From the IMG/VR virus record IMGVR_UViG_3300031787_007614, positions 1-64,000 of that record: 64,000 nucleotides of DNA; one strand, given 5' to 3'. This document shows, piece by piece, positions 1,670-64,000 of this stretch (position 1 is its first letter; each line of letters opens with the position of its first letter). The notes below the pieces were generated by a model. That model had not been told where the DNA came from, did no database searches, and saw nothing but the letters and a program-made list of their open reading frames with translations. A program made the translations under genes and the position numbers.

Positions 1670-2560
1670 TTAGAACTGTACGACCAACCCGCCTGCTACT
1701 TGTTTGACATCAGTGGCTGCTGAGGTTCCCTCAACTGTACGATACAAAACTTGTGCATAGGTCTTTTTGCTGAAAGCATACTCAGCACCTACGTTGTAAC
1801 TCTTGATGCCATTTTCAATGCGACCATAGCTGGCCTTCACTGTGACTGGTCCACCAAGTTTGTGTGCCACGCCGACCAACTGAGCACGGTTGGTGTTGGC
1901 AGCAACGCCTTTGTTGTCGCTTGCGCTGGCAAACACAGTGGTTGCACCAAATTTAGCACGAGCAGCCAACACGTCACTGGTTTCTGCGCCAGCTTCGTAA
2001 CGAGCATAAGTCAACACAGCAGGTCCAACTGCGGCAATCACGGATGCGGCATAAGGATCAGCGGCAGTGCCAACAGCACCAGTGCTACGATCAAAGTTAG
2101 CAGAGACATTGCCAAAGTTCACAGAAGTGAAAGCGGCATTGCTCAAACGCAAACCACGCAGGTTATGCACGTCGGCAGCTGAGCTACCAATCAATGTGCC
2201 AAATGGATCATTGTCGCTGATGGCCAAGAAGTGAGTGTGAACATTGCGACCAAGATCAACGCTACCCATTTTGTGAGCAATACCCACGGTGCTTTGGCGA
2301 TCGCCAAGTCTAGTGTCAGTACCAGTGTCTGGGCTGTTGGCTTGGATGCCGGTCTCGTATGTGGCACGAGCTGTTAATCCGCCACCTAAGTTTTCAGTAG
2401 CACGAATGCCAAAGTGACTCAAGTCATTGGCCATGCCTTGCACGGTGGAAGCACCAGTTTTGGTGTTGTCAAGGTAAGTGCCAACACGACCATAGATACC
2501 AACTTGTGCGCTTGCAACACCAGCAACTGCCAGGGTCAACGCAATTAGAACTTTCTTCAT
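1670..2560 (-). CDS. Gram-negative general porin (Betaproteobacteria-type)
   Basis: Signal peptide, N-terminal V.IYGRV, S.FGIR..E.LGGGL, Y.FSKKT, C-terminal Phe. Confidence 0.9.
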   Translation of the reverse strand: MKKVLIALTLAVAGVASAQVGIYGRVGTYLDNTKTGASTVQGMANDLSHFGIRATENLGGGLTARATYETGIQANSPDTGTDTRLGDRQSTVGIAHKMGSVDLGRNVHTHFLAISDNDPFGTLIGSSAADVHNLRGLRLSNAAFTSVNFGNVSANFDRSTGAVGTAADPYAASVIAAVGPAVLTYARYEAGAETSDVLAARAKFGATTVFASASDNKGVAANTNRAQLVGVAHKLGGPVTVKASYGRIENGIKSYNVGAEYAFSKKTYAQVLYRTVEGTSAATDVKQVAGGLVVQF

Positions 2561-2608
2561 AAGTAATTTTTCCTTGTTAATGAAATGATCAAATGTCGAT
2601 CATAGAGT

Positions 2609-2638
2609 ATTATATAGCACAAACACTGAGAATGTCAA
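2609..2638 (-). promoter_or_regulatory. sigma70 promoter of porin
   Basis: TTGACA with downstream TATAAT-like box. Confidence 0.6.
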
Positions 2639-2640
2639 AG

Positions 2641-2666
2641 AAAATGGCTACTTTCGCAGCCATTTT
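2641..2666 (-). terminator. Terminator after tmRNA
   Basis: AAAATGGCT-GCGAAAGT-AGCCATTTT. Confidence 0.75.
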
Positions 2667-2826
2667 GGTGGTTTCTGTTACGAGGTATTTCCTACCCTAG
2701 ACGACCTTAAGCGGCCATCAAGAATTTTTCATCATTTGCAGATAAAAGTTTTGCTTGATTTACGGTCATCGCCTACCGTGCTGTCCACTCTGTTACTCTT
2801 TGCCCTGTCGAATCTAGGTCAGGCCC
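2666..2826 (-). ncRNA. ssrA: tmRNA, two-piece: piece with 5' acceptor strand and tag ORF ANDEKFLMAA* (2707-2739)
   Basis: Starts GGGCCTGA-CCTAGATTCGAC; tag reading frame ends in AA-stop. Confidence 0.92.
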
Positions 2827-2839
2827 ATCATAAAGAAAC

Positions 2840-2917
2840 TTAATCTACGCTTAATGTTGTTAACAACAAGCATAATATTGGAAAAACAATTAATAAAAAT
2901 TTTGCTAAATTTTCCAT
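2840..2917 (-). CDS. 25-aa hydrophobic micropeptide in tmRNA intervening segment
   Basis: MENLAKFLLIVFPILCLLLTTLSVD*; start is 1 nt after the upstream micro-ORF stop. Confidence 0.45.
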   Translation of the reverse strand: MENLAKFLLIVFPILCLLLTTLSVD

Positions 2918-2918
2918 A

Positions 2919-3029
2919 TTACCATAACTCACAGTTTTTTATTTTCTCTTCGTCCAATGTGGTATCACGTGTAAAATAAAATACACCAAACACTAACCAA
3001 AATAACAAAAATAAAACATAACCTATCAT
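2919..3029 (-). CDS. 36-aa single-TM micropeptide in tmRNA intervening segment
   Basis: MIGYVLFLLFWLVFGVFYFTRDTTLDEEKIKNCELW*; RBS AAGGAAG just upstream. Confidence 0.55.
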   Translation of the reverse strand: MIGYVLFLLFWLVFGVFYFTRDTTLDEEKIKNCELW

Positions 3030-3041
3030 TAAACTTCCTTA

Positions 3042-3108
3042 TGGTGGACCTGGGGGGATTCGCACCCCCGTCCAGAACACTTTTCTCTCGGCTTCATACA
3101 GCAATAAC
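3042..3108 (-). ncRNA. ssrA: tmRNA, two-piece: piece with T-arm and ACCA end (transcribed first)
   Basis: GGAC-GGGGG-TGCGAAT-CCCCC-CAGGTCC-ACCA; pairs with GGGCCTG giving the G3-U70 Ala identity. Confidence 0.92.
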
Positions 3109-3112
3109 TCGC

Positions 3113-3141
3113 AGTATATATTTATTCTTTGGGCTTGTCAA
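3113..3141 (-). promoter_or_regulatory. sigma70 promoter of tmRNA
   Basis: TTGACA-17-TATACT. Confidence 0.8.
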
Positions 3142-3283
3142 CTGCTTTGGAGATGATGTCATACACTTGTGCGTATGCATCAGTAATTTTGTCTAGTTGT
3201 TGTTCCGACACCAAGTCTGTGTCCTCCAGACTGACCAAGTCTCGGGCTAGATTTTCTTGTAGTTTTTTTATGGGATTGAGCAC
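3122..3283 (-). CDS. Hypothetical protein, 53 aa (GTG start)
   Basis: Manual translation VLNPIKKLQENLARDL...; ATAAATA motif upstream. Confidence 0.5.
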   Translation of the reverse strand: MLNPIKKLQENLARDLVSLEDTDLVSEQQLDKITDAYAQVYDIISKAVDKPKE

Positions 3284-3291
3284 ATACCTAT

Positions 3292-3825
3292 TTATTCATC
3301 CCCGCTATCTACTGGGATCCAGCCCAACTTAAAAAAGTCTTCCTGGATTTCTTCTGTGACATGTCCTTCGGGTACATATCTTTTAACACCGTCAGCATCA
3401 CCATTGCCCAGTCCATCGCCTATGCCCGAACAGTACCAATCAATATAGTCACCTTGTTCACGCATGTCGGCAACAATACCCCCGGCATAGCGCCACGAAC
3501 AACTGTAGGTCTCTCCCTTTAGCAAAGGCCATACTTCGTTGCGTTGCCAGTCTTGATTGCACAAGGCTGCGTAGATGTTTTGAGCGTAGGTATCGCTGGC
3601 CTTGGCTTTGTCGCAAACCCACTTGGTGCTACGCAAATCATATTCAAGATTGTTTTCTCGCCACCGTTCGTCGGCTTCGCGTTGAGCCTGATGTTCGTTG
3701 ATCATGCGTTCAAGATCTAAAGCTCGTTGAACATCTTCGTCAGTGGCAGGATCTCCTCCTTCCGCAATGACATCTTCAATTCTGCATTGACTGTGAAAGG
3801 TTCCGCGAGTAGGACTTTTGTTCAT
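3292..3825 (-). CDS. Hypothetical phage protein
   Basis: Start moved to MNKSP to avoid overlap with tRNA-Leu. Confidence 0.75.
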   Translation of the reverse strand: MNKSPTRGTFHSQCRIEDVIAEGGDPATDEDVQRALDLERMINEHQAQREADERWRENNLEYDLRSTKWVCDKAKASDTYAQNIYAALCNQDWQRNEVWPLLKGETYSCSWRYAGGIVADMREQGDYIDWYCSGIGDGLGNGDADGVKRYVPEGHVTEEIQEDFFKLGWIPVDSGDE

Positions 3826-3831
3826 AATGTT

Positions 3832-3917
3832 TGGTACCAGAGACGGGACTCGAACCCGTATGCCCTTGCAAGCGGCAGATTTTAAGTCTGCTGTGTATAC
3901 CATTCCACCACTCTGGC
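3832..3917 (-). tRNA. tRNA-Leu(TAA)
   Basis: Long variable arm, anticodon loop CT-TAA-AA, ACCA. Confidence 0.95.
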
Positions 3918-4548: not shown

Positions 4549-5313
4549 TCAACGGTCTTTGTCAGTTCTTACCAATTGAATTAAGCGGTATCCAGGATCA
4601 AATTCCCACCATTTTTTGCCAAACTGTGGATCTGCGGCAGCGGCGTGATGATTGTTGTGCCAGCCCTCTCCACCAGTCAAATATCCTACCAGCAGGTTAT
4701 TTGAACTTTGATCACGTGTGTCAAAATTTCTATATCCTGATGGACTGTGAGTGAGAGAGTTGGTCAGTGAACTGGCATGTTGCAACAATAGTGACGGAAC
4801 CAAATAAGCATACACTACTGCATAAGGATCTATCATGTAAACTGCCACCCCGACCAAGATAGTGTACAACCAATGATTGTAGTACATGTGCATGTGAAAT
4901 TTGGATTTCACAATCTCTGGAGCATAACTTAATTTTGGAGTAGCAGGTGTGAGTCTAAATTGCACGGCTAGATAACCGTATACCGCAGGTGAGTGCGGAT
5001 CATCTTTTGTGTCAGAGTGTCTATGATGCGCTCGATGTATTGCTACCCAATACAACATTGGTAAAGTTGTGCCAGGAATAGCAATCAATGTTCCTAGATA
5101 TTCAAACCATTTTGGTGCTTGAAAAGAACGATGGGTGATCAGCCGATGAACTGTTACAGTTCCGACTACCATCTTGATATAGTAGACCAACAGACATATT
5201 GCCCACTGCCATGCTTCACTGTTGAAGATAAAGTAGACCAGGATCACATGTAGACAGGCACTGTATGCAATCATTTCGTTGTGCGAAGGCACAAACCAGT
5301 TTTTCTTTTTCAT
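4549..5313 (-). CDS. Membrane fatty-acid (delta-9-type) desaturase
   Basis: Three His boxes HRLITH, HRAHH, WHNNHH; TM segments; WWEFD. Confidence 0.92.
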   Translation of the reverse strand: MKKKNWFVPSHNEMIAYSACLHVILVYFIFNSEAWQWAICLLVYYIKMVVGTVTVHRLITHRSFQAPKWFEYLGTLIAIPGTTLPMLYWVAIHRAHHRHSDTKDDPHSPAVYGYLAVQFRLTPATPKLSYAPEIVKSKFHMHMYYNHWLYTILVGVAVYMIDPYAVVYAYLVPSLLLQHASSLTNSLTHSPSGYRNFDTRDQSSNNLLVGYLTGGEGWHNNHHAAAADPQFGKKWWEFDPGYRLIQLVRTDKDR

Positions 5314-5480: not shown

Positions 5481-5773
5481 AGCCTGGAATCATAAGTGAA
5501 GGCAGCAAGATATCGCATGCTGGCACGGCTGGGAATGTGCTGATTACAGAACCGTTGGTATGCCGCACGCCAACGCTTTTGGACAGGTGCTGGCGCATGG
5601 CAAGCAAGATAATGCAAGTGGCCAAATCTGCGCCCAATGCTGATGTGATTGGGCTTCCAGCCTGCAGGATACCATTTGTCGCGAGTTTGCCAATTGTAGT
5701 TTACCCAGACACCCATTCGGCGTTCTTGCATGATATACTTTTTAGATATATCTTGTGGTCTAAATCGGTTCAT
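5477..5773 (-). CDS. Hypothetical protein
   Basis: ATGA overlaps with neighbours. Confidence 0.6.
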   Translation of the reverse strand: MNRFRPQDISKKYIMQERRMGVWVNYNWQTRDKWYPAGWKPNHISIGRRFGHLHYLACHAPAPVQKRWRAAYQRFCNQHIPSRASMRYLAAFTYDSRL

Positions 5774-6564
5774 TTTTGCATCATCAGCGCATTGAAGTTT
5801 GCAGGAACAACAATTGTTTGCACACGACCGTTCTTGATACCTTCTGAGATATTCATCATAGCCTGCGCTTGCATGTAAGCAATTGACTGAGCACCTTGAT
5901 TACTCAATGCTTGCATACGTTCTGCTTCCATCTTAGCAGTCTTAACTTCAACTTCTTTTTGTTTCAATTCATTCTTGGCACGAACCAACTCATTTGCACT
6001 CGCAACCACAGAATCTGCAGGTACAATATTCCGAATCAACACTTGACCAACAACCAAACTACCATCAAGTTTTTCATCAGCCAAACTCTTTTGAATTTGT
6101 TCTTTAATTGCTTGTTCCATCACTTGGCGATTATCAGCCATGTCTAGTGCCTCGTACTTTCGGGCTTCTTTGTAGATGGCATTACGAGTGGTTTGAACCA
6201 TATAGTTGTACATCAAGTAGATGTCGCCGTTGTGCCGAGCATGGAATGCTTGACTCTTTTGGCTATACAACTCGGCTACCTGTGCTTGATTGATGTTATA
6301 GATAACCACTGCATCAAAGTCTTTCATTGTTGAGTTATCTTTAGCAACAGGTGTCATGTCCTCCAGTTTGACATTAACGTCCTTGATTGGGAATGTAAGA
6401 ACATCACCCCAAAAGGTTTGATTAAACGAGCCAGGCATTAATTCACCTTGCTGGACTTGTTTATCAAAGCCAACACGTACACCAACTTCACCTGTTTCGA
6501 TACGAGTACAACCTGTTGCCAGCACAGCCGCGGCAAGAACGGAGAGAGTCAAAATACGTTTCAT
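5770..6564 (-). CDS. SPFH/band-7 (prohibitin-like) lipoprotein
   Basis: Lipobox LATGC, IETGEVGV, C-terminal coiled coil. Confidence 0.88.
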   Translation of the reverse strand: MKRILTLSVLAAAVLATGCTRIETGEVGVRVGFDKQVQQGELMPGSFNQTFWGDVLTFPIKDVNVKLEDMTPVAKDNSTMKDFDAVVIYNINQAQVAELYSQKSQAFHARHNGDIYLMYNYMVQTTRNAIYKEARKYEALDMADNRQVMEQAIKEQIQKSLADEKLDGSLVVGQVLIRNIVPADSVVASANELVRAKNELKQKEVEVKTAKMEAERMQALSNQGAQSIAYMQAQAMMNISEGIKNGRVQTIVVPANFNALMMQK

Positions 6565-63041: not shown

Positions 63042-63737
63042 TTATTGTTTTTTCACTATGGGCAGAGTTTTCCTAACCATGCCCGGGCATACCATACTCA
63101 GCATGGTTTCATATTGTAGGCTATTGTGCTCGATGTAGTAATAGCTTTCAGTAACATCATTGCGCCACCAATACACCCGTGTTGGCCTAATTTCAATATC
63201 TAAAAATTCTCGCAAACTCTTGCTGGCTGCAACGTCATTGCCCTGGGTGGTTATCCATGCAGCCAGTCGAGACTTTTGTGTTTTGCCAAGTGATCGCCCA
63301 CGGAAATAAGTGCGGTATTGATACTGTGGATTTTTTAATAAAATTGTATCAGGTGGCAAATTGAGTTCTGCTCGTTTGAGATCTACAGACTCAATCCAAT
63401 CGCATGCCATCAATCGACCATGCAAGCCAAGATTGTTTGTGTACACTGTGAGATAATTGTTGAAAAACACCATTTTCTTTGGGGGAGTTTCTGCTGCCAA
63501 CAGTGCTCGCATGCCTTCTAAATTGTCACAACAGCGTGTGGTAAATTTGCTTATAAATTTTTCGCCATAGCGTTGGTAATGAGAATTTCTACTAGCTTCG
63601 TACTCCATTCTCACGCGAATGTGTGACTGCATTTTCTTTTGATCAAGACTGCGAATACACCCAATTTCGTCCTGCTGCCAGGTCATGGCATATTCATATG
63701 CGTTGTAGTACAACGAACTACGCGATTCACTTCTCAT
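63042..63737 (-). CDS. Hypothetical protein
   Basis: 231-aa ORF. Confidence 0.7.
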   Translation of the reverse strand: MRSESRSSLYYNAYEYAMTWQQDEIGCIRSLDQKKMQSHIRVRMEYEASRNSHYQRYGEKFISKFTTRCCDNLEGMRALLAAETPPKKMVFFNNYLTVYTNNLGLHGRLMACDWIESVDLKRAELNLPPDTILLKNPQYQYRTYFRGRSLGKTQKSRLAAWITTQGNDVAASKSLREFLDIEIRPTRVYWWRNDVTESYYYIEHNSLQYETMLSMVCPGMVRKTLPIVKKQ

Positions 63738-64000
63738 TGTCCACCACTATAATTCCATCAACATTTACACTTGCAATCACTTCCACAGGTGCGTCCGCTT
63801 GAACATCAAACACAATTTTGTCCGCCACAACATCCGCAGTGATAGTACAATCACGCAAGCGATCAAACAGGATCTTCTTGCTCAACGGCACACGAATCAG
63901 TTCATCAATCTTCCTCGAGAGTGGTCGCGCACCCAGCTTCGAATCATAGCCCTTGTCAGCAAGCAGGTCAACTGCGCCTTCGGATAAGTTGAGACGTATA
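63727..64000 (-). CDS. ClpA/ClpB-type ATPase, C-terminal fragment (continues beyond window)
   Basis: GYDSKLGARPLSRKI...I..PL...IL. Confidence 0.85.
   Translation of the reverse strand, partial: IRLNLSEGAVDLLADKGYDSKLGARPLSRKIDELIRVPLSKKILFDRLRDCTITADVVADKIVFDVQADAPVEVIASVNVDGIIVVDNEK

What the first reader, a model, noticed from the sequence alone, without database searches (positions are those of the whole stretch)
2666..3141. Circularly permuted two-piece tmRNA in a phage
Seen: promoter, then the T-arm/ACCA piece, then a 215-nt spacer, then the GGGCCTG piece with tag ANDEKFLMAA and a terminator. G3-U70 is present. Inter-piece pairings CAGGGCA/TGTTCTG and CAGCA/TGCTG are available. The total is compact (about 230 nt). 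Known: permuted tmRNAs occur in Alphaproteobacteria and in some cyanobacteria and Betaproteobacteria. Inference: phage-run ribosome rescue, possibly linked to the Clp ATPase at the window end.
Basis: partly seen in the sequence, partly recalled or inferred. Interest (0 to 1): 0.65.

Follow-up and report, generated by a model that had tools for sequence, protein, structure and literature searches.

The report
Phage two-piece tmRNA with coding spacer
A 364-kb freshwater phage carries a real circularly permuted (two-piece) tmRNA gene, which is a known kind of thing, but its 215-nt "spacer" encodes two tiny membrane peptides and belongs to a large phage family that uses this spacer as a slot for small protein genes, which I could not find described.

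Summary
ARAGORN and Rfam (tmRNA_permuted, 115 bits against a cut-off of 47) call a permuted tmRNA with these parts:
- sigma-70-like promoter at 3141-3113
- acceptor piece at about 3109-3042, ending in ACCA
- 215-nt intervening sequence (IVS) at 3041-2827
- coding piece at 2826 to about 2636, with G3:U70, tag ANDEKFLMAA and a terminator

The host record is a complete 364,404-bp phage. It has no smpB, but it encodes ClpA, ClpS, two ClpP and DnaJ.

Two-piece tmRNAs in phages are already published, so the headline is not new.

- Its ends form a covarying stem that extends the acceptor helix.
- The 5' arm is a Shine-Dalgarno sequence (AAGGAAG), followed by ORF1 (36 aa) and ORF2 (25 aa). Both are hydrophobic and under purifying selection (pN/pS 0.20 and 0.34).
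- In more than 200 IMG/VR contigs the same slot carries at least 31 unrelated ORF families of 30-133 aa, one of them a thioredoxin. The stop codon usually ends 1 nt before tmRNA nucleotide G1.
- The cassettes differ between syntenic phages.

Processing, tagging and translation remain untested.

Novelty: the implied novelty of 'permuted tmRNA in a phage' does not hold. 53 of 133 distinct phage tmRNAs were already reported as two-piece (PMC9004378).

It is a two-ORF coding cassette in a conserved expression slot.

The parts
3113..3141 (-). sigma-70-like promoter of the tmRNA precursor (-35 TTGACA at 3141-3136, 17-nt spacer, -10 TATACT at 3118-3113)
   Evidence: Consensus scan, 11 of 12 positions match. 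No other minus-strand promoter-like site lies between here and the terminator.
3042..3109 (-). Acceptor piece (the 3' part of a standard tmRNA): 5' strands of two inter-piece helices (UGCUG, UGUUCUG), T-arm, acceptor 3' strand CAGGUCC, and ACCA ending at 3042. The 5' end (3109-3103) is approximate.
   Evidence: Rfam RF04321 alignment. ARAGORN. Fold. Covariation of the UGUUCUG/CAGGGCA helix and the acceptor stem in 41 distinct relatives.
2827..3041 (-). Intervening sequence (IVS) of 215 nt, absent from the mature tmRNA. It is a two-ORF cassette bounded by complementary arms.
   Evidence: The same cassette is found in L078 (98.6% identical) and in L091/L129 (diverged), always between the two tmRNA pieces.
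3030..3041 (-). 5' arm of the acceptor-extension stem, containing the Shine-Dalgarno-like AAGGAAG (3040-3034)
   Evidence: Pairs base for base with 2842-2831. This arm duplex alone is -5.4 kcal/mol, and the whole 24-bp helix is -27.8. The arm pairing covaries across 96 unique IVS: 88% of positions paired, against 63% when partners are shuffled.
2919..3029 (-). IVS ORF1, 36 aa plus stop: an N-terminal hydrophobic helix followed by a charged tail. The ATG lies 4 nt after the SD.
   Evidence: Listed. Intact in 3 distinct versions, with substitutions at codon positions 1/2/3 of 14/2/24 and pN/pS 0.20. Kyte-Doolittle mean hydropathy over 17 aa is 2.5. Its conserved core occurs in IMG/VR only inside tmRNA IVS.
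2840..2917 (-). IVS ORF2, 25 aa plus stop, hydrophobic. Its ATG lies 1 nt after the ORF1 stop, and its own stop TAA lies inside the 3' arm.
   Evidence: substitutions at codon positions 1/2/3 of 10/2/16, pN/pS 0.34, Kyte-Doolittle mean 2.7.
2827..2842 (-). 3' arm of the extension stem (UAAGUUUCUUUAUGAU), ending 1 nt before G1. In most relatives the UGA in this arm is the stop codon of the IVS ORF.
2636..2826 (-). Coding piece: G1 at 2826 (the inferred RNase P site), GGGCCUG acceptor 5' strand with G3:U70, partner strands CAGGGCA and CAGCA, a hairpin, the tag frame and the terminator
   Evidence: (beta_tmRNA partial hit of 65.2 bits on this piece).
2707..2739 (-). Tag reading frame: GCA resume codon to TAA, encoding ANDEKFLMAA
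   Evidence: ARAGORN. The same peptide is encoded with synonymous differences in several other distinct phage tmRNA genes.
2636..2666 (-). Intrinsic terminator: a 9-bp hairpin flanked by an A-tract and a U-tract
63727..64000 (-). C-terminal end of a phage ClpA homologue. The whole gene is G000 63727-66009, 760 aa. It is genomic context, not physically linked to the tmRNA.

Best explanation
This is a genuine ssrA gene of the circularly permuted (two-piece) kind, carried by a 364-kb freshwater jumbo phage inside its tRNA/GOLLD RNA island.

Inferred mechanism of the tmRNA:
1. Host RNA polymerase transcribes one precursor of about 470 nt, from the sigma-70-like promoter to the terminator.
2. The precursor folds so that the 5' end of the downstream piece (GGGCCUG) pairs with the 3' end of the upstream piece (CAGGUCC-ACCA). 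Two further helices hold the pieces together.
3. Host RNase P cuts before G1 (2826), and host nucleases trim the upstream piece back to CCA (3042). This leaves a two-piece tmRNA of about 65 + 190 nt.
4. Host AlaRS charges it through G3:U70.
5. With host SmpB it enters stalled ribosomes and appends ANDEKFLMAA.
6. Tagged proteins go to Clp proteases, possibly including the phage's own ClpA/ClpP.

The excised 215 nt are an mRNA rather than a passive spacer.
- The 5' arm of the stem that extends the acceptor helix is a Shine-Dalgarno sequence.
- It is followed by two coupled ORFs for single-helix membrane peptides of 36 and 25 aa.
- The arm duplex is weak (A-U and G-U pairs, about -5 kcal/mol), and the SD is transcribed long before its partner. 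Ribosomes can therefore load co-transcriptionally or by breathing of the stem.
- The peptides' function is unknown.

The window is one member of a large family of phage tmRNA genes in which this IVS is an exchangeable cargo slot for small proteins, expressed from the strong tmRNA promoter.

Shown: the gene anatomy, the structure and its covariation, purifying selection on the ORFs, and the diversity and exchange of cassettes.
Inferred: transcription as one unit, the processing sites, charging, tagging, translation of the ORFs, and any role of Clp.
For: tmRNA identity:
- ARAGORN permuted call with the tag.
- RF04321 at 115 bits and RF01849 at 57.4 bits.
- The coding piece matches beta_tmRNA, including the tag region.
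- The MFE fold reproduces the architecture, z = -4.0.
- In 41 distinct relatives the acceptor stem and the UGUUCUG/CAGGGCA helix covary, and G3:U70 is kept in 40 of 41.
- 167 of 186 related genes carry an ssrA-like tag, mostly ...FALAA.

Phage context:
- G000 is a 364,404-bp record with direct terminal repeats, estimated 100% complete.
- There is no SmpB, SspB or RNase III.
- ClpA, DnaJ, ClpS and two ClpP are present.

Coding IVS:
- 87 complete genes share the SD arm. In 63 of their 69 unique spacers an ORF runs from the SD over at least 75% of the spacer, and in 45 of 69 the stop ends 1 nt before G1.
- The ORFs fall into 31 unrelated families.
- pN/pS is 0.10-0.30 in 8 of the 10 families that had comparable (equal-length) variants; the other two, barely diverged, give 0.92 and 1.12. 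For the window, ORF1 gives 0.20 and ORF2 gives 0.34.
- One cassette is a thioredoxin: PF00085, 75 bits.
- A 122-aa cassette has stand-alone homologues of 188-208 aa in ordinary operons, one of them named GNAT by its source.
- In a sample anchored on the acceptor arm only, 26 of 33 IVS of 131 nt or more carry such an ORF. Shuffling the interior gives 0.75 on average, with a maximum of 5 in 500 shuffles. SD-like arms occur in 30 of 33 long IVS but in only 3 of 35 short ones.
- The stem arms covary, and they are weaker in ORF-bearing IVS (-7.7 against -10.2 kcal/mol, p = 1e-4).

Cassette exchange:
- L059 has flanks syntenic with the window's (79-88% identity) but a different IVS.
- L078 has a 98.6% identical IVS, although its flanks are at most 83% identical.

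Transcription unit: there is no promoter-like or terminator-like site on the minus strand inside the IVS.
Against: - No direct evidence shows the two RNA pieces, aminoacylation, tagging or the peptides.
- The metatranscriptome evidence is contigs only. It includes relatives at 90% identity or more, and DNA carry-over cannot be excluded.
- The window's two ORFs are very short and T-rich. Support for them rests on only three distinct versions, effectively two lineages.
- In the folded precursor the SD and the first bases of the ORF1 start codon are base-paired.
- The T-loop has G at position 55.
- The tag ends in LMAA rather than the usual ALAA. No bacterial genome in the scan encodes LMAA, so its fate in proteolysis is unknown.
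- Sub-typing is ambiguous: alpha_tmRNA passes its threshold, while beta_tmRNA is split by the long IVS and stays below its own.
The percentages therefore describe this sub-family, not phage tmRNAs in general.
- pN/pS was pooled over pairs without a tree.
- Metagenome assemblies can be chimeric at conserved 65-nt segments. This could inflate the apparent cassette exchange, though not the ORF pattern.
Confidence: 0.78

Rival explanations
1. The tmRNA is real, but in this window the IVS is only a processing spacer. ORF1 and ORF2 are not translated, and their conservation reflects recent common descent or RNA-level constraints.
For: - The ORFs are 36 and 25 codons long in a T-rich stretch, where Phe/Leu/Val-rich frames arise easily.
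- Only three distinct versions exist.
- The SD and the first bases of the start codon are paired in the MFE fold.
- There are no family hits in Pfam or PHROGs, and no usable Atlas neighbour.
- RNA-library contigs hardly cover the IVS.
Against: - Both frames stay open in L091/L129 despite 26-40 substitutions that concentrate at third codon positions (24 against 2, and 16 against 2). pN/pS is 0.20 and 0.34.
- The ATG sits at the same distance from the same SD as in 30 other ORF families, including a thioredoxin.
- ORF2 starts 1 nt after the ORF1 stop.
- Shuffled interiors almost never keep an SD-anchored frame open.
Confidence: 0.15
2. The phage tmRNA is not a general rescue factor but a reprogramming device. 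It competes with the host tmRNA and gives stalled-ribosome products a different tag (LMAA instead of ALAA). This either spares them from host ClpXP or channels them to the phage's own ClpA/ClpP, for example to recycle amino acids or to blunt RNase-based host defences. This reading is compatible with the anatomy given above and differs only in purpose.
For: - The LMAA ending was found only in phage contigs. All 32 bacterial hits whose tag ends in LAA read ANDEKFALAA, almost all of them Burkholderiales.
- The phage encodes ClpA, ClpS and two ClpP.
- The gene lies in an island of tRNAs and a GOLLD RNA.
- A CDS-less phage tmRNA that inhibits the host tmRNA is on record (PMC11915505).
Against: - Most relatives in the same phage family keep the ordinary ...FALAA ending, so the family as a whole does not avoid the host-type degron.
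- The Clp genes lie 60-145 kb from the tmRNA.
- ClpS argues for an N-degron role of ClpA (from my own knowledge).
- There are no biochemical data.
Confidence: 0.2
3. The two pieces are separate transcription units that merely flank a small protein operon, so there is no common precursor.
For: The 3' arm contains TATGAT, which resembles a -10 hexamer. IVS of up to 491 nt exist.
Against: - The scan finds no minus-strand promoter or terminator inside the IVS.
- A start about 7 nt after TATGAT would fall inside the acceptor stem and destroy it.
- The arms covary as a helix continuous with the acceptor stem, which makes sense only in one RNA.
- Short-IVS relatives (25-97 nt) have the classical permuted layout.
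Confidence: 0.07
4. The gene is a dead remnant, such as an ssrA fragment picked up at an integration site, or host contamination of the contig.
For: Prophages often integrate into ssrA and carry fragments of it (PMC9004378).
Against: - Both pieces, the promoter, the tag frame and the terminator are intact.
- The CM score is 115 bits.
- The gene is conserved with covariation in more than 200 viral contigs.
- The record is a complete phage genome with terminal repeats.
Confidence: 0.02

Closest known systems
Two-piece tmRNA of bacteria (Caulobacter and other Alphaproteobacteria, a betaproteobacterial lineage, some cyanobacteria; Rfam RF04321, RF01849, RF01850, RF01851)
   Same: - Permuted gene order: acceptor piece, then IVS, then coding piece.
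- Acceptor stem formed between the two pieces, with G3:U70.
- T-arm followed by ACCA.
- Inter-piece helices.
- Alanine resume codon and an ssrA-like tag.
- The coding piece and tag resemble the beta model, and the tag's first six residues are those of Burkholderiales tmRNAs (ANDEKF).
   Different: - It is encoded by a phage that has no smpB.
- The IVS is about ten times the length of the roughly 25 consensus positions in the Rfam model, and it is protein-coding.
- The tag ends in LMAA.
- The T-loop is UGCGAAU.
- The full-length beta_tmRNA score is below threshold, because the IVS splits the match.
Phage-encoded two-piece tmRNAs (OM43 phage Melnitz, Pelagibacter myophages, cyanophages; PMC9004378) and tmRNAs of huge phages (PMC7162821)
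   Same: A permuted ssrA in an aquatic phage, behind an early-type promoter, among translation-related genes.
   Different: - No cultured phage in the INPHARED collection matches this gene.
- There is no glutamine riboswitch.
- Those papers, as far as I could read them, do not report ORFs inside the IVS.
tmRNA genes interrupted by group I introns, some carrying homing endonuclease genes; permuted tmRNA genes with a tRNA-Ala or a repetitive element in the IVS (PMC11915505)
   Same: A tmRNA gene that carries extra genetic cargo in a segment removed from the mature RNA.
   Different: - Here the cargo sits in the permutation IVS rather than in a T-loop intron.
- It is removed by ordinary end-processing rather than by self-splicing.
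- The cargo is a diverse set of small non-endonuclease proteins.
- The SD and the stop codon are built into the processing stem.
Intervening sequences of bacterial 23S rRNA genes that are excised at a stem, some with a conserved ORF (Leptospira; the S23p family). Recalled from memory, not checked here.
   Same: An excised stem-bounded segment of a structural-RNA precursor that carries a protein gene.
   Different: - It is a different RNA.
- It holds a single conserved ORF family rather than an open slot.
- RNase III is the known excising enzyme there. No enzyme is known here, and the phage encodes no RNase III.
Promoter-early stem-loop (PeSL) cassettes of T4-type phages, which shuffle small ORFs between conserved flanks. 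Recalled from memory, not checked here.
   Same: Small accessory ORFs that are exchanged between related phages at short conserved sequences.
   Different: Here the conserved flanks are the two halves of a functional RNA gene.

Membership tests
tmRNA, permuted / two-piece form (RF04321) | Covariance-model score above the curated threshold | tested here: met
   115 bits against a gathering score of 47, E 1e-21, model positions 1-213 of 213. ARAGORN independently calls tmRNA*.
tmRNA, permuted / two-piece form (RF04321) | Permuted order: the T-arm and CCA piece lies upstream of the piece that starts with the acceptor 5' strand and carries the tag | tested here: met
   Acceptor piece at 3109-3042, coding piece at 2826-2636 on the minus strand.
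tmRNA, permuted / two-piece form (RF04321) | A 7-bp acceptor stem with the G3:U70 alanine identity pair, discriminator A, and CCA | tested here: met
   GGGCCUG pairs with CAGGUCC, followed by ACCA. G3:U70 is present in 40 of 41 distinct relatives, and positions 4-6 show compensatory changes.
tmRNA, permuted / two-piece form (RF04321) | A T-arm with a 5-bp stem and a 7-nt loop of tRNA type | tested here: met
   GGGGG/UGCGAAU/CCCCC. U54, C56 and A58 are kept, but position 55 is G. The same arm occurs in more than 119 contigs.
tmRNA, permuted / two-piece form (RF04321) | A tag reading frame with an alanine resume codon, ending in hydrophobic residues plus AA and a stop | tested here: met
   GCA..TAA at 2739-2707 encodes ANDEKFLMAA. 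Relatives carry ANDSQFALAA, ANDELFALAA and similar tags.
tmRNA, permuted / two-piece form (RF04321) | The precursor is processed into two RNAs that stay paired | tested here: inconclusive
   In four freshwater RNA libraries, contigs lie on 3038-3109 and on 2671-2830 and hardly at all on the IVS. These are contigs, they include relatives at 90% identity, and they cannot show RNA ends.
tmRNA, permuted / two-piece form (RF04321) | Works with SmpB, and trans-translation or tagging activity is demonstrated | not testable with these tools
   No SmpB homologue in the 364-kb phage genome at E <= 1, so the host's would be needed. The activity needs an experiment.
beta_tmRNA (RF01850) | A full-length match above the gathering score of 84 bits | tested here: not met
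   The match is split into 65.2 bits (coding piece) and 18.7 bits (T-arm) by the long IVS. Relatives with short IVS and the same tag score 117-166 bits. The gene therefore looks like this lineage, but by the curated rule it does not pass.
alpha_tmRNA (RF01849) | A full-length match above the gathering score of 50 bits | tested here: met
   57.4 bits at 3145-2664. This passes only marginally, and the tag region and hairpin align better to the beta model. Sub-type is left open.
ClpA (TIGR02639), for the ATPase at the window end | Clp_N domain, two AAA modules and the D2-small domain, with no ClpB middle domain; equivalog score | tested here: inconclusive
   The protein is 760 aa. The best hit is ClpA at 793 bits over positions 7-721, below the trusted cut-off of 993. 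The ClpB models match in two pieces.

The most novel reading that the evidence does not exclude
In a widespread group of uncultured freshwater phages, the excised intervening sequence of the permuted tmRNA gene is a dedicated, exchangeable expression slot for small proteins.
- The processing stem doubles as the ribosome-binding site (5' arm) and as the last codons plus stop (3' arm).
- One strong promoter therefore yields both a ribosome-rescue RNA and a variable accessory protein.
- Translation of the cassette and folding or processing of the tmRNA are mutually exclusive on any one molecule, which couples the two.
- In most members RNase P cleavage would leave the cassette mRNA ending 1 nt after its stop codon. 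A terminating ribosome there could itself be a substrate for the tmRNA made from the same transcript.

In the window the slot holds two membrane peptides.
Probability: 0.55. Interest if true: 0.8.

Novelty: new variant of a known kind. Interest (0 to 1): 0.64.

Why it matters
A two-piece tmRNA in a phage is by itself a known kind of thing, and this would be one more member.

The new element is a protein-coding intervening sequence with translation signals built into the tmRNA processing stem, recurring with at least 31 unrelated cargo families. It would matter for four reasons.
- It gives a previously unrecognised gene arrangement: an mRNA nested inside the precursor of a stable RNA, released by tRNA-type processing.
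- It points to a natural hot spot for cassette exchange between phages.
- It exposes a source of unannotated small proteins that RNA-gene annotation masks.
- It offers a compact natural design for co-expressing an RNA and a protein.

It also makes testable how a phage with its own tmRNA, tRNA set, ClpA/ClpS/ClpP and DnaJ, but no SmpB, manages translation quality control in a freshwater betaproteobacterial host.

Tried and rejected
- BLASTN of the whole locus against 50,697 GenBank phage records found no match, so no cultured relative is available.
- A glutamine riboswitch as in phage Melnitz: no Rfam hit of that kind at E <= 10 in 2400-3400.
- A homing endonuclease or intron in the IVS: Pfam and PHROGs gave nothing of that kind for ten cassette proteins, and only the thioredoxin hit was significant.
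- An internal promoter or terminator in the IVS: none on the minus strand.
- A pseudoknot-like pairing between the hairpin loop UAGGCGAU and GUCGUCUA just after the tag stop is possible in the window. The closest short-IVS relative (L015) does not conserve it, so I do not claim it.
- The ESM Atlas holds ORF1 letter for letter but gave no usable neighbour.
- RNA evidence: only assembled contigs were on offer, and they cannot show ends or levels. I use them only as 'consistent with'.
- Host assignment from the tag: bacterial genomes carry ANDEKFALAA (Rubrivivax, Roseateles, Ideonella, Cupriavidus, Zoogloea and other Burkholderiales) and never LMAA. This supports a betaproteobacterial host only weakly.
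- Keiler 2000 and Sharkady & Williams 2004 are not held in the library. What I say about Caulobacter processing and the beta lineage is from my own knowledge and from citing papers.
- The supplement of the tmRNA database paper has no phage breakdown.
- Literature searches for ORFs in tmRNA intervening sequences found none. The library is partial, so prior description cannot be excluded.
Full report
**1. The observation**

- ARAGORN reports a permuted tmRNA (tmRNA*) at 2616-3134(-) with tag peptide ANDEKFLMAA.
- Rfam's tmRNA_permuted model (RF04321) matches 3103-2707 end to end, at 115 bits against a gathering score of 47. alpha_tmRNA (RF01849) gives 57.4 bits against 50.

From the sequence itself:
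- Promoter TTGACA-17-TATACT at 3141-3113, matching 11 of 12 positions.
- T-arm GGGGG/UGCGAAU/CCCCC.
- Acceptor 3' strand CAGGUCC at 3052-3046, discriminator A at 3045, CCA at 3044-3042.
- A stretch of exactly 215 nt at 3041-2827.
- G1 at 2826, beginning GGGCCUG, which gives G3:U70.
- Tag frame GCA..TAA at 2739-2707.
- A 9-bp hairpin at 2666-2641 followed by a U-rich tail.

A plain minimum-free-energy fold of the 471-nt precursor finds them, together with the T-arm, the acceptor helix and the terminator (-127.8 kcal/mol; shuffles average -106.7; z = -4.0).

The mature RNA would be about 255 nt, not 230.

**2. Context**

- The window is the first 64 kb of a 364,404-bp IMG/VR virus record with direct terminal repeats, estimated 100% complete. 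It carries a phage DNA polymerase and virion-protein matches.
- The tmRNA lies among tRNA genes: Met, Arg and Leu upstream, Glu and Asp downstream.
- The other end of the genome, which adjoins the window through the terminal repeat, carries about 25 more tRNA matches and a GOLLD RNA at 204 bits.
- The DNA occurs in freshwater and lake metagenomes from 17 studies.
- The phage has no SmpB, no SspB and no RNase III.
- The 'Clp ATPase at the window end' is a 760-aa ClpA homologue. Its best NCBIfam hit is ClpA at 793 bits, below the 993 cut-off, and it has no ClpB middle domain. A DnaJ gene lies next to it.
- The genome also encodes two ClpP homologues (273 and 96 bits) and ClpS (80 bits).
- These genes lie 60-145 kb from the tmRNA, so the link is co-occurrence and not an operon.

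**3. What is already known**

- Permuted tmRNA genes are transcribed as one precursor and cut by tRNA-processing enzymes into two paired pieces (PMC11915505).
- They are not new in phages. Buchholz et al. found that 53 of 133 distinct tmRNAs in 18,146 phage genomes are two-piece, nearly all of them from aquatic phages (PMC9004378).
- Huge phages are known to carry tmRNAs (PMC7162821).

**4. Relatives**

A scan of IMG/VR for any DNA encoding ANDEKFLMAA plus a stop found 14 contigs.
- Five contigs share an identical tmRNA locus and roughly 1-kb flanks with the window.
- The others are distinct permuted tmRNA genes whose Rfam span ranges from 205 to 586 nt.
- The short ones score 117-166 bits on beta_tmRNA. 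In the window that model is split by the long IVS into 65.2 + 18.7 bits.
- Bacterial genomes that encode ANDEKFxxAA are almost all Burkholderiales, and they read ANDEKFALAA. None reads LMAA.
- The window also carries a Porin_4 gene directly downstream of the tmRNA.

Together these point, weakly, to a freshwater betaproteobacterial host.

**5. The spacer is bounded by a stem that contains translation signals**

Aligning the relatives showed that the IVS begins UAAGGAAGUUU and ends AAGUUUCUUUAUGAU. These arms pair base for base and continue the acceptor helix. The result is 24 bp with one C·A mismatch, at -27.8 kcal/mol, while the SD-containing arm duplex alone is only -5.4.

First scan, for CCACCA plus the 5' arm:
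- 102 of 120 hits have a perfect 5-bp T-stem just upstream, so they are tmRNA acceptor pieces.
- 87 are complete genes, with 69 unique spacers of 100-415 nt.
- In 63 of the 69, an ORF starts 3-5 nt after AAGGAA(G/A) and covers at least 75% of the spacer.
- In 45 of the 69, the ORF ends at the UGA inside the 3' arm, 1 nt before G1, so these proteins end in ..VSL.
- The ORFs fall into 31 families with no detectable similarity to each other, from 30 to 133 aa.

**6. Are these real genes?**

- In 8 of the 10 families that had comparable (equal-length) variants, substitutions concentrate at third codon positions and pN/pS is 0.10-0.30; the other two, barely diverged, give 0.92 and 1.12. For example, the 122-aa family has 147/80/500 differences at codon positions 1/2/3.
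- One cassette (L037, L069, L093) is a thioredoxin: PF00085 at 75 bits, E 4e-21.
- The 122-aa cassette has 188-208-aa homologues, one named a GNAT acetyltransferase by its source. These sit as ordinary genes in protein operons with no tmRNA around them. This suggests capture of normal genes.
- To remove the bias of fixing the SD arm, I scanned again with only the T-arm and acceptor strand. This gave 129 complete genes and 96 unique IVS of 25-491 nt.
  - IVS under 84 nt are plain hairpins. Only 3 of 35 have an SD-like arm.
  - Of the 33 IVS of 131 nt or more, 30 have an SD-like arm (AAGGA, GGAG, GAGG and similar), and 26 have an SD-anchored ORF over at least 80% of their length.
  - Shuffling the interiors gives 0.75 such ORFs on average, with a maximum of 5 in 500 trials.
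- The arms covary. Positions 1-12 are 88% paired, against 63% with shuffled partners (maximum 66%) and about 50% in shifted registers. There are three to six pair types per column.
- Arms of ORF-bearing IVS are weaker than those of short IVS (-7.7 against -10.2 kcal/mol, p = 1e-4) and richer in G·U pairs. This fits a stem that ribosomes must open.

**7. The window's own cassette**

Here the slot holds two ORFs instead of one.
- ORF1 (3029-2919, 36 aa) has its ATG 4 nt after the SD. It reads as a hydrophobic helix followed by a charged tail.
- ORF2 (2917-2840, 25 aa) starts 1 nt after the ORF1 stop. It is hydrophobic, and its stop lies in the 3' arm.
- Kyte-Doolittle means over 17 residues are 2.5 and 2.7.
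- Both frames are intact in L078, and in the more distant L091/L129. Differences at codon positions 1/2/3 are 14/2/24 for ORF1 and 10/2/16 for ORF2, giving pN/pS of 0.20 and 0.34.
- A degenerate scan for the ORF1 core found it in nine contigs, always inside a tmRNA IVS.
- A gene caller has predicted ORF1 before, since the ESM Atlas holds it letter for letter. No family or neighbour gives a function.
- With only about two independent lineages, the window-specific evidence is moderate. The family-wide pattern carries most of the weight.

**8. Cassettes move**

- L059 shares the window's neighbourhood: 79% identity over 807 nt upstream, 95% in the acceptor piece, 86% in the coding piece and 88% downstream. 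Its slot, however, holds the 122-aa ORF.
- L078 has an IVS 98.6% identical to the window's. Yet its coding piece (78% over 63 nt, with a different tag, ANDSQFALAA) and its upstream flank (83%) are much more distant.
- The conserved RNA pieces probably serve as recombination flanks.
- Chimeric metagenome assembly at these short conserved segments could exaggerate this, but it cannot create frames that fit the slot.

**9. Mechanism**

Shown:
- The gene anatomy.
- A conserved and covarying tRNA-like domain and extension stem.
- An intact ssrA-type tag.
- Selection on the cassette ORFs.
- Absence of smpB in the phage.

Inferred:
- One precursor runs from the promoter at 3141-3113 to the terminator. 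No internal signals were found.
- RNase P cuts at G1, and the acceptor piece is trimmed to CCA.
- Host AlaRS charges the RNA, and host SmpB works with it.
- The tag ANDEKFLMAA is appended, and tagged proteins are degraded by Clp proteases.
- The cassette is translated either co-transcriptionally, because the SD is made 200 nt before its partner strand, or by breathing of the weak arm duplex.

A ribosome terminating in the 3' arm would cover G1-G10. Translation and tmRNA folding should therefore exclude each other on a given molecule.

In the many relatives whose stop ends 1 nt before G1, RNase P cleavage would leave the mRNA ending right after its stop codon. Such an end might itself attract tmRNA. 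This last point is speculation.

RNA-library contigs from four freshwater metatranscriptomes lie on the two pieces and almost never on the IVS. That is consistent with excision, but it proves nothing. They are contigs, they include relatives, and DNA may be present.

**10. Purpose**

- The default reading is maintenance of translation in the infected cell, alongside the phage's large tRNA set.
- The unusual LMAA ending, found only in phage contigs, and the phage's own ClpA/ClpS/ClpP leave room for a reprogramming role. However, most relatives keep ...FALAA, so I rank that second.
- The function of the two membrane peptides is unknown.

**11. Novelty and limits**

- I found no description of protein-coding IVS in tmRNA genes. 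The 2025 database paper singles out a tRNA gene and a repetitive element in an IVS as unusual and mentions no ORFs. Four full-text searches found nothing (and 11 with 13).
- The library is partial, and two key older papers are not held.
- pN/pS was pooled over pairs without a tree.
- All relatives are metagenomic contigs.
- No step of expression was observed directly.

I file the locus as a new variant of a known kind.

Noticed in passing
G000 362284-362748 (-), outside the window, near the right end of the genome; also L002:10928-11336: A GOLLD RNA (RF02032, 204 bits) embedded in an array of about 25 tRNA matches. Through the terminal repeat this array adjoins the tRNA/tmRNA cluster at the window's start, so the tmRNA is part of a large RNA-gene island.
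   Followed up: partly
window 1670-2560 (-), promoter at 2638-2609 (-): A phage-encoded outer-membrane porin (Porin_4, 90 bits) directly downstream of the tmRNA terminator, behind a perfect 12-of-12 sigma-70 consensus promoter.
   Followed up: partly
window 4549-5313 (-) and 5770-6564 (-): A fatty-acid desaturase homologue (PF00487) and an SPFH/Band 7 protein (PF01145) lie just upstream of the tRNA cluster. Together with the porin and the IVS peptides, this makes a run of membrane-related accessory genes.
   Followed up: no
G000 63727-66009 (-), 66073-66849 (-), 124885-125421 (-), 127101-127628 (-), 146519-146752 (-): The phage encodes ClpA, DnaJ (adjacent to ClpA), two ClpP paralogues and ClpS. 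That is a near-complete ClpAPS system plus a co-chaperone, scattered over the genome.
   Followed up: partly
window 3058-3052 (T-loop); relatives L007, L083 and others: The T-loops in this phage tmRNA family are non-canonical: UGCGAAU, with G at the psi55 position, in more than 119 contigs, and GGCAGUG in another sub-group. Some relatives keep UUCGA(A/C)U.
   Followed up: no
L246, L254, L256, L257, L260, L269 (Cupriavidus genomes): Several Cupriavidus assemblies hold a permuted tmRNA with a 32-nt IVS and tag ANDEKFALAA, some on very small contigs. This may be a second, mobile-element-borne ssrA copy.
   Followed up: no
L011:5670-5872 (-): A group I intron match (RF00028, 51 bits) near the tRNA genes of a related phage contig.
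   Followed up: no
window 3292-3903 (-): The listed 203-aa ORF overlaps tRNA-Leu (3832-3917) at its 5' end, so its real start must lie further downstream. It has no Pfam or PHROG match.
   Followed up: no
L021, L030, L031, L019, L022 and similar loci: In some relatives the IVS ORF lacks the in-frame UGA in the 3' arm and runs 12-69 nt into the mature tmRNA coding piece, so protein-coding and tmRNA sequence overlap.
   Followed up: no
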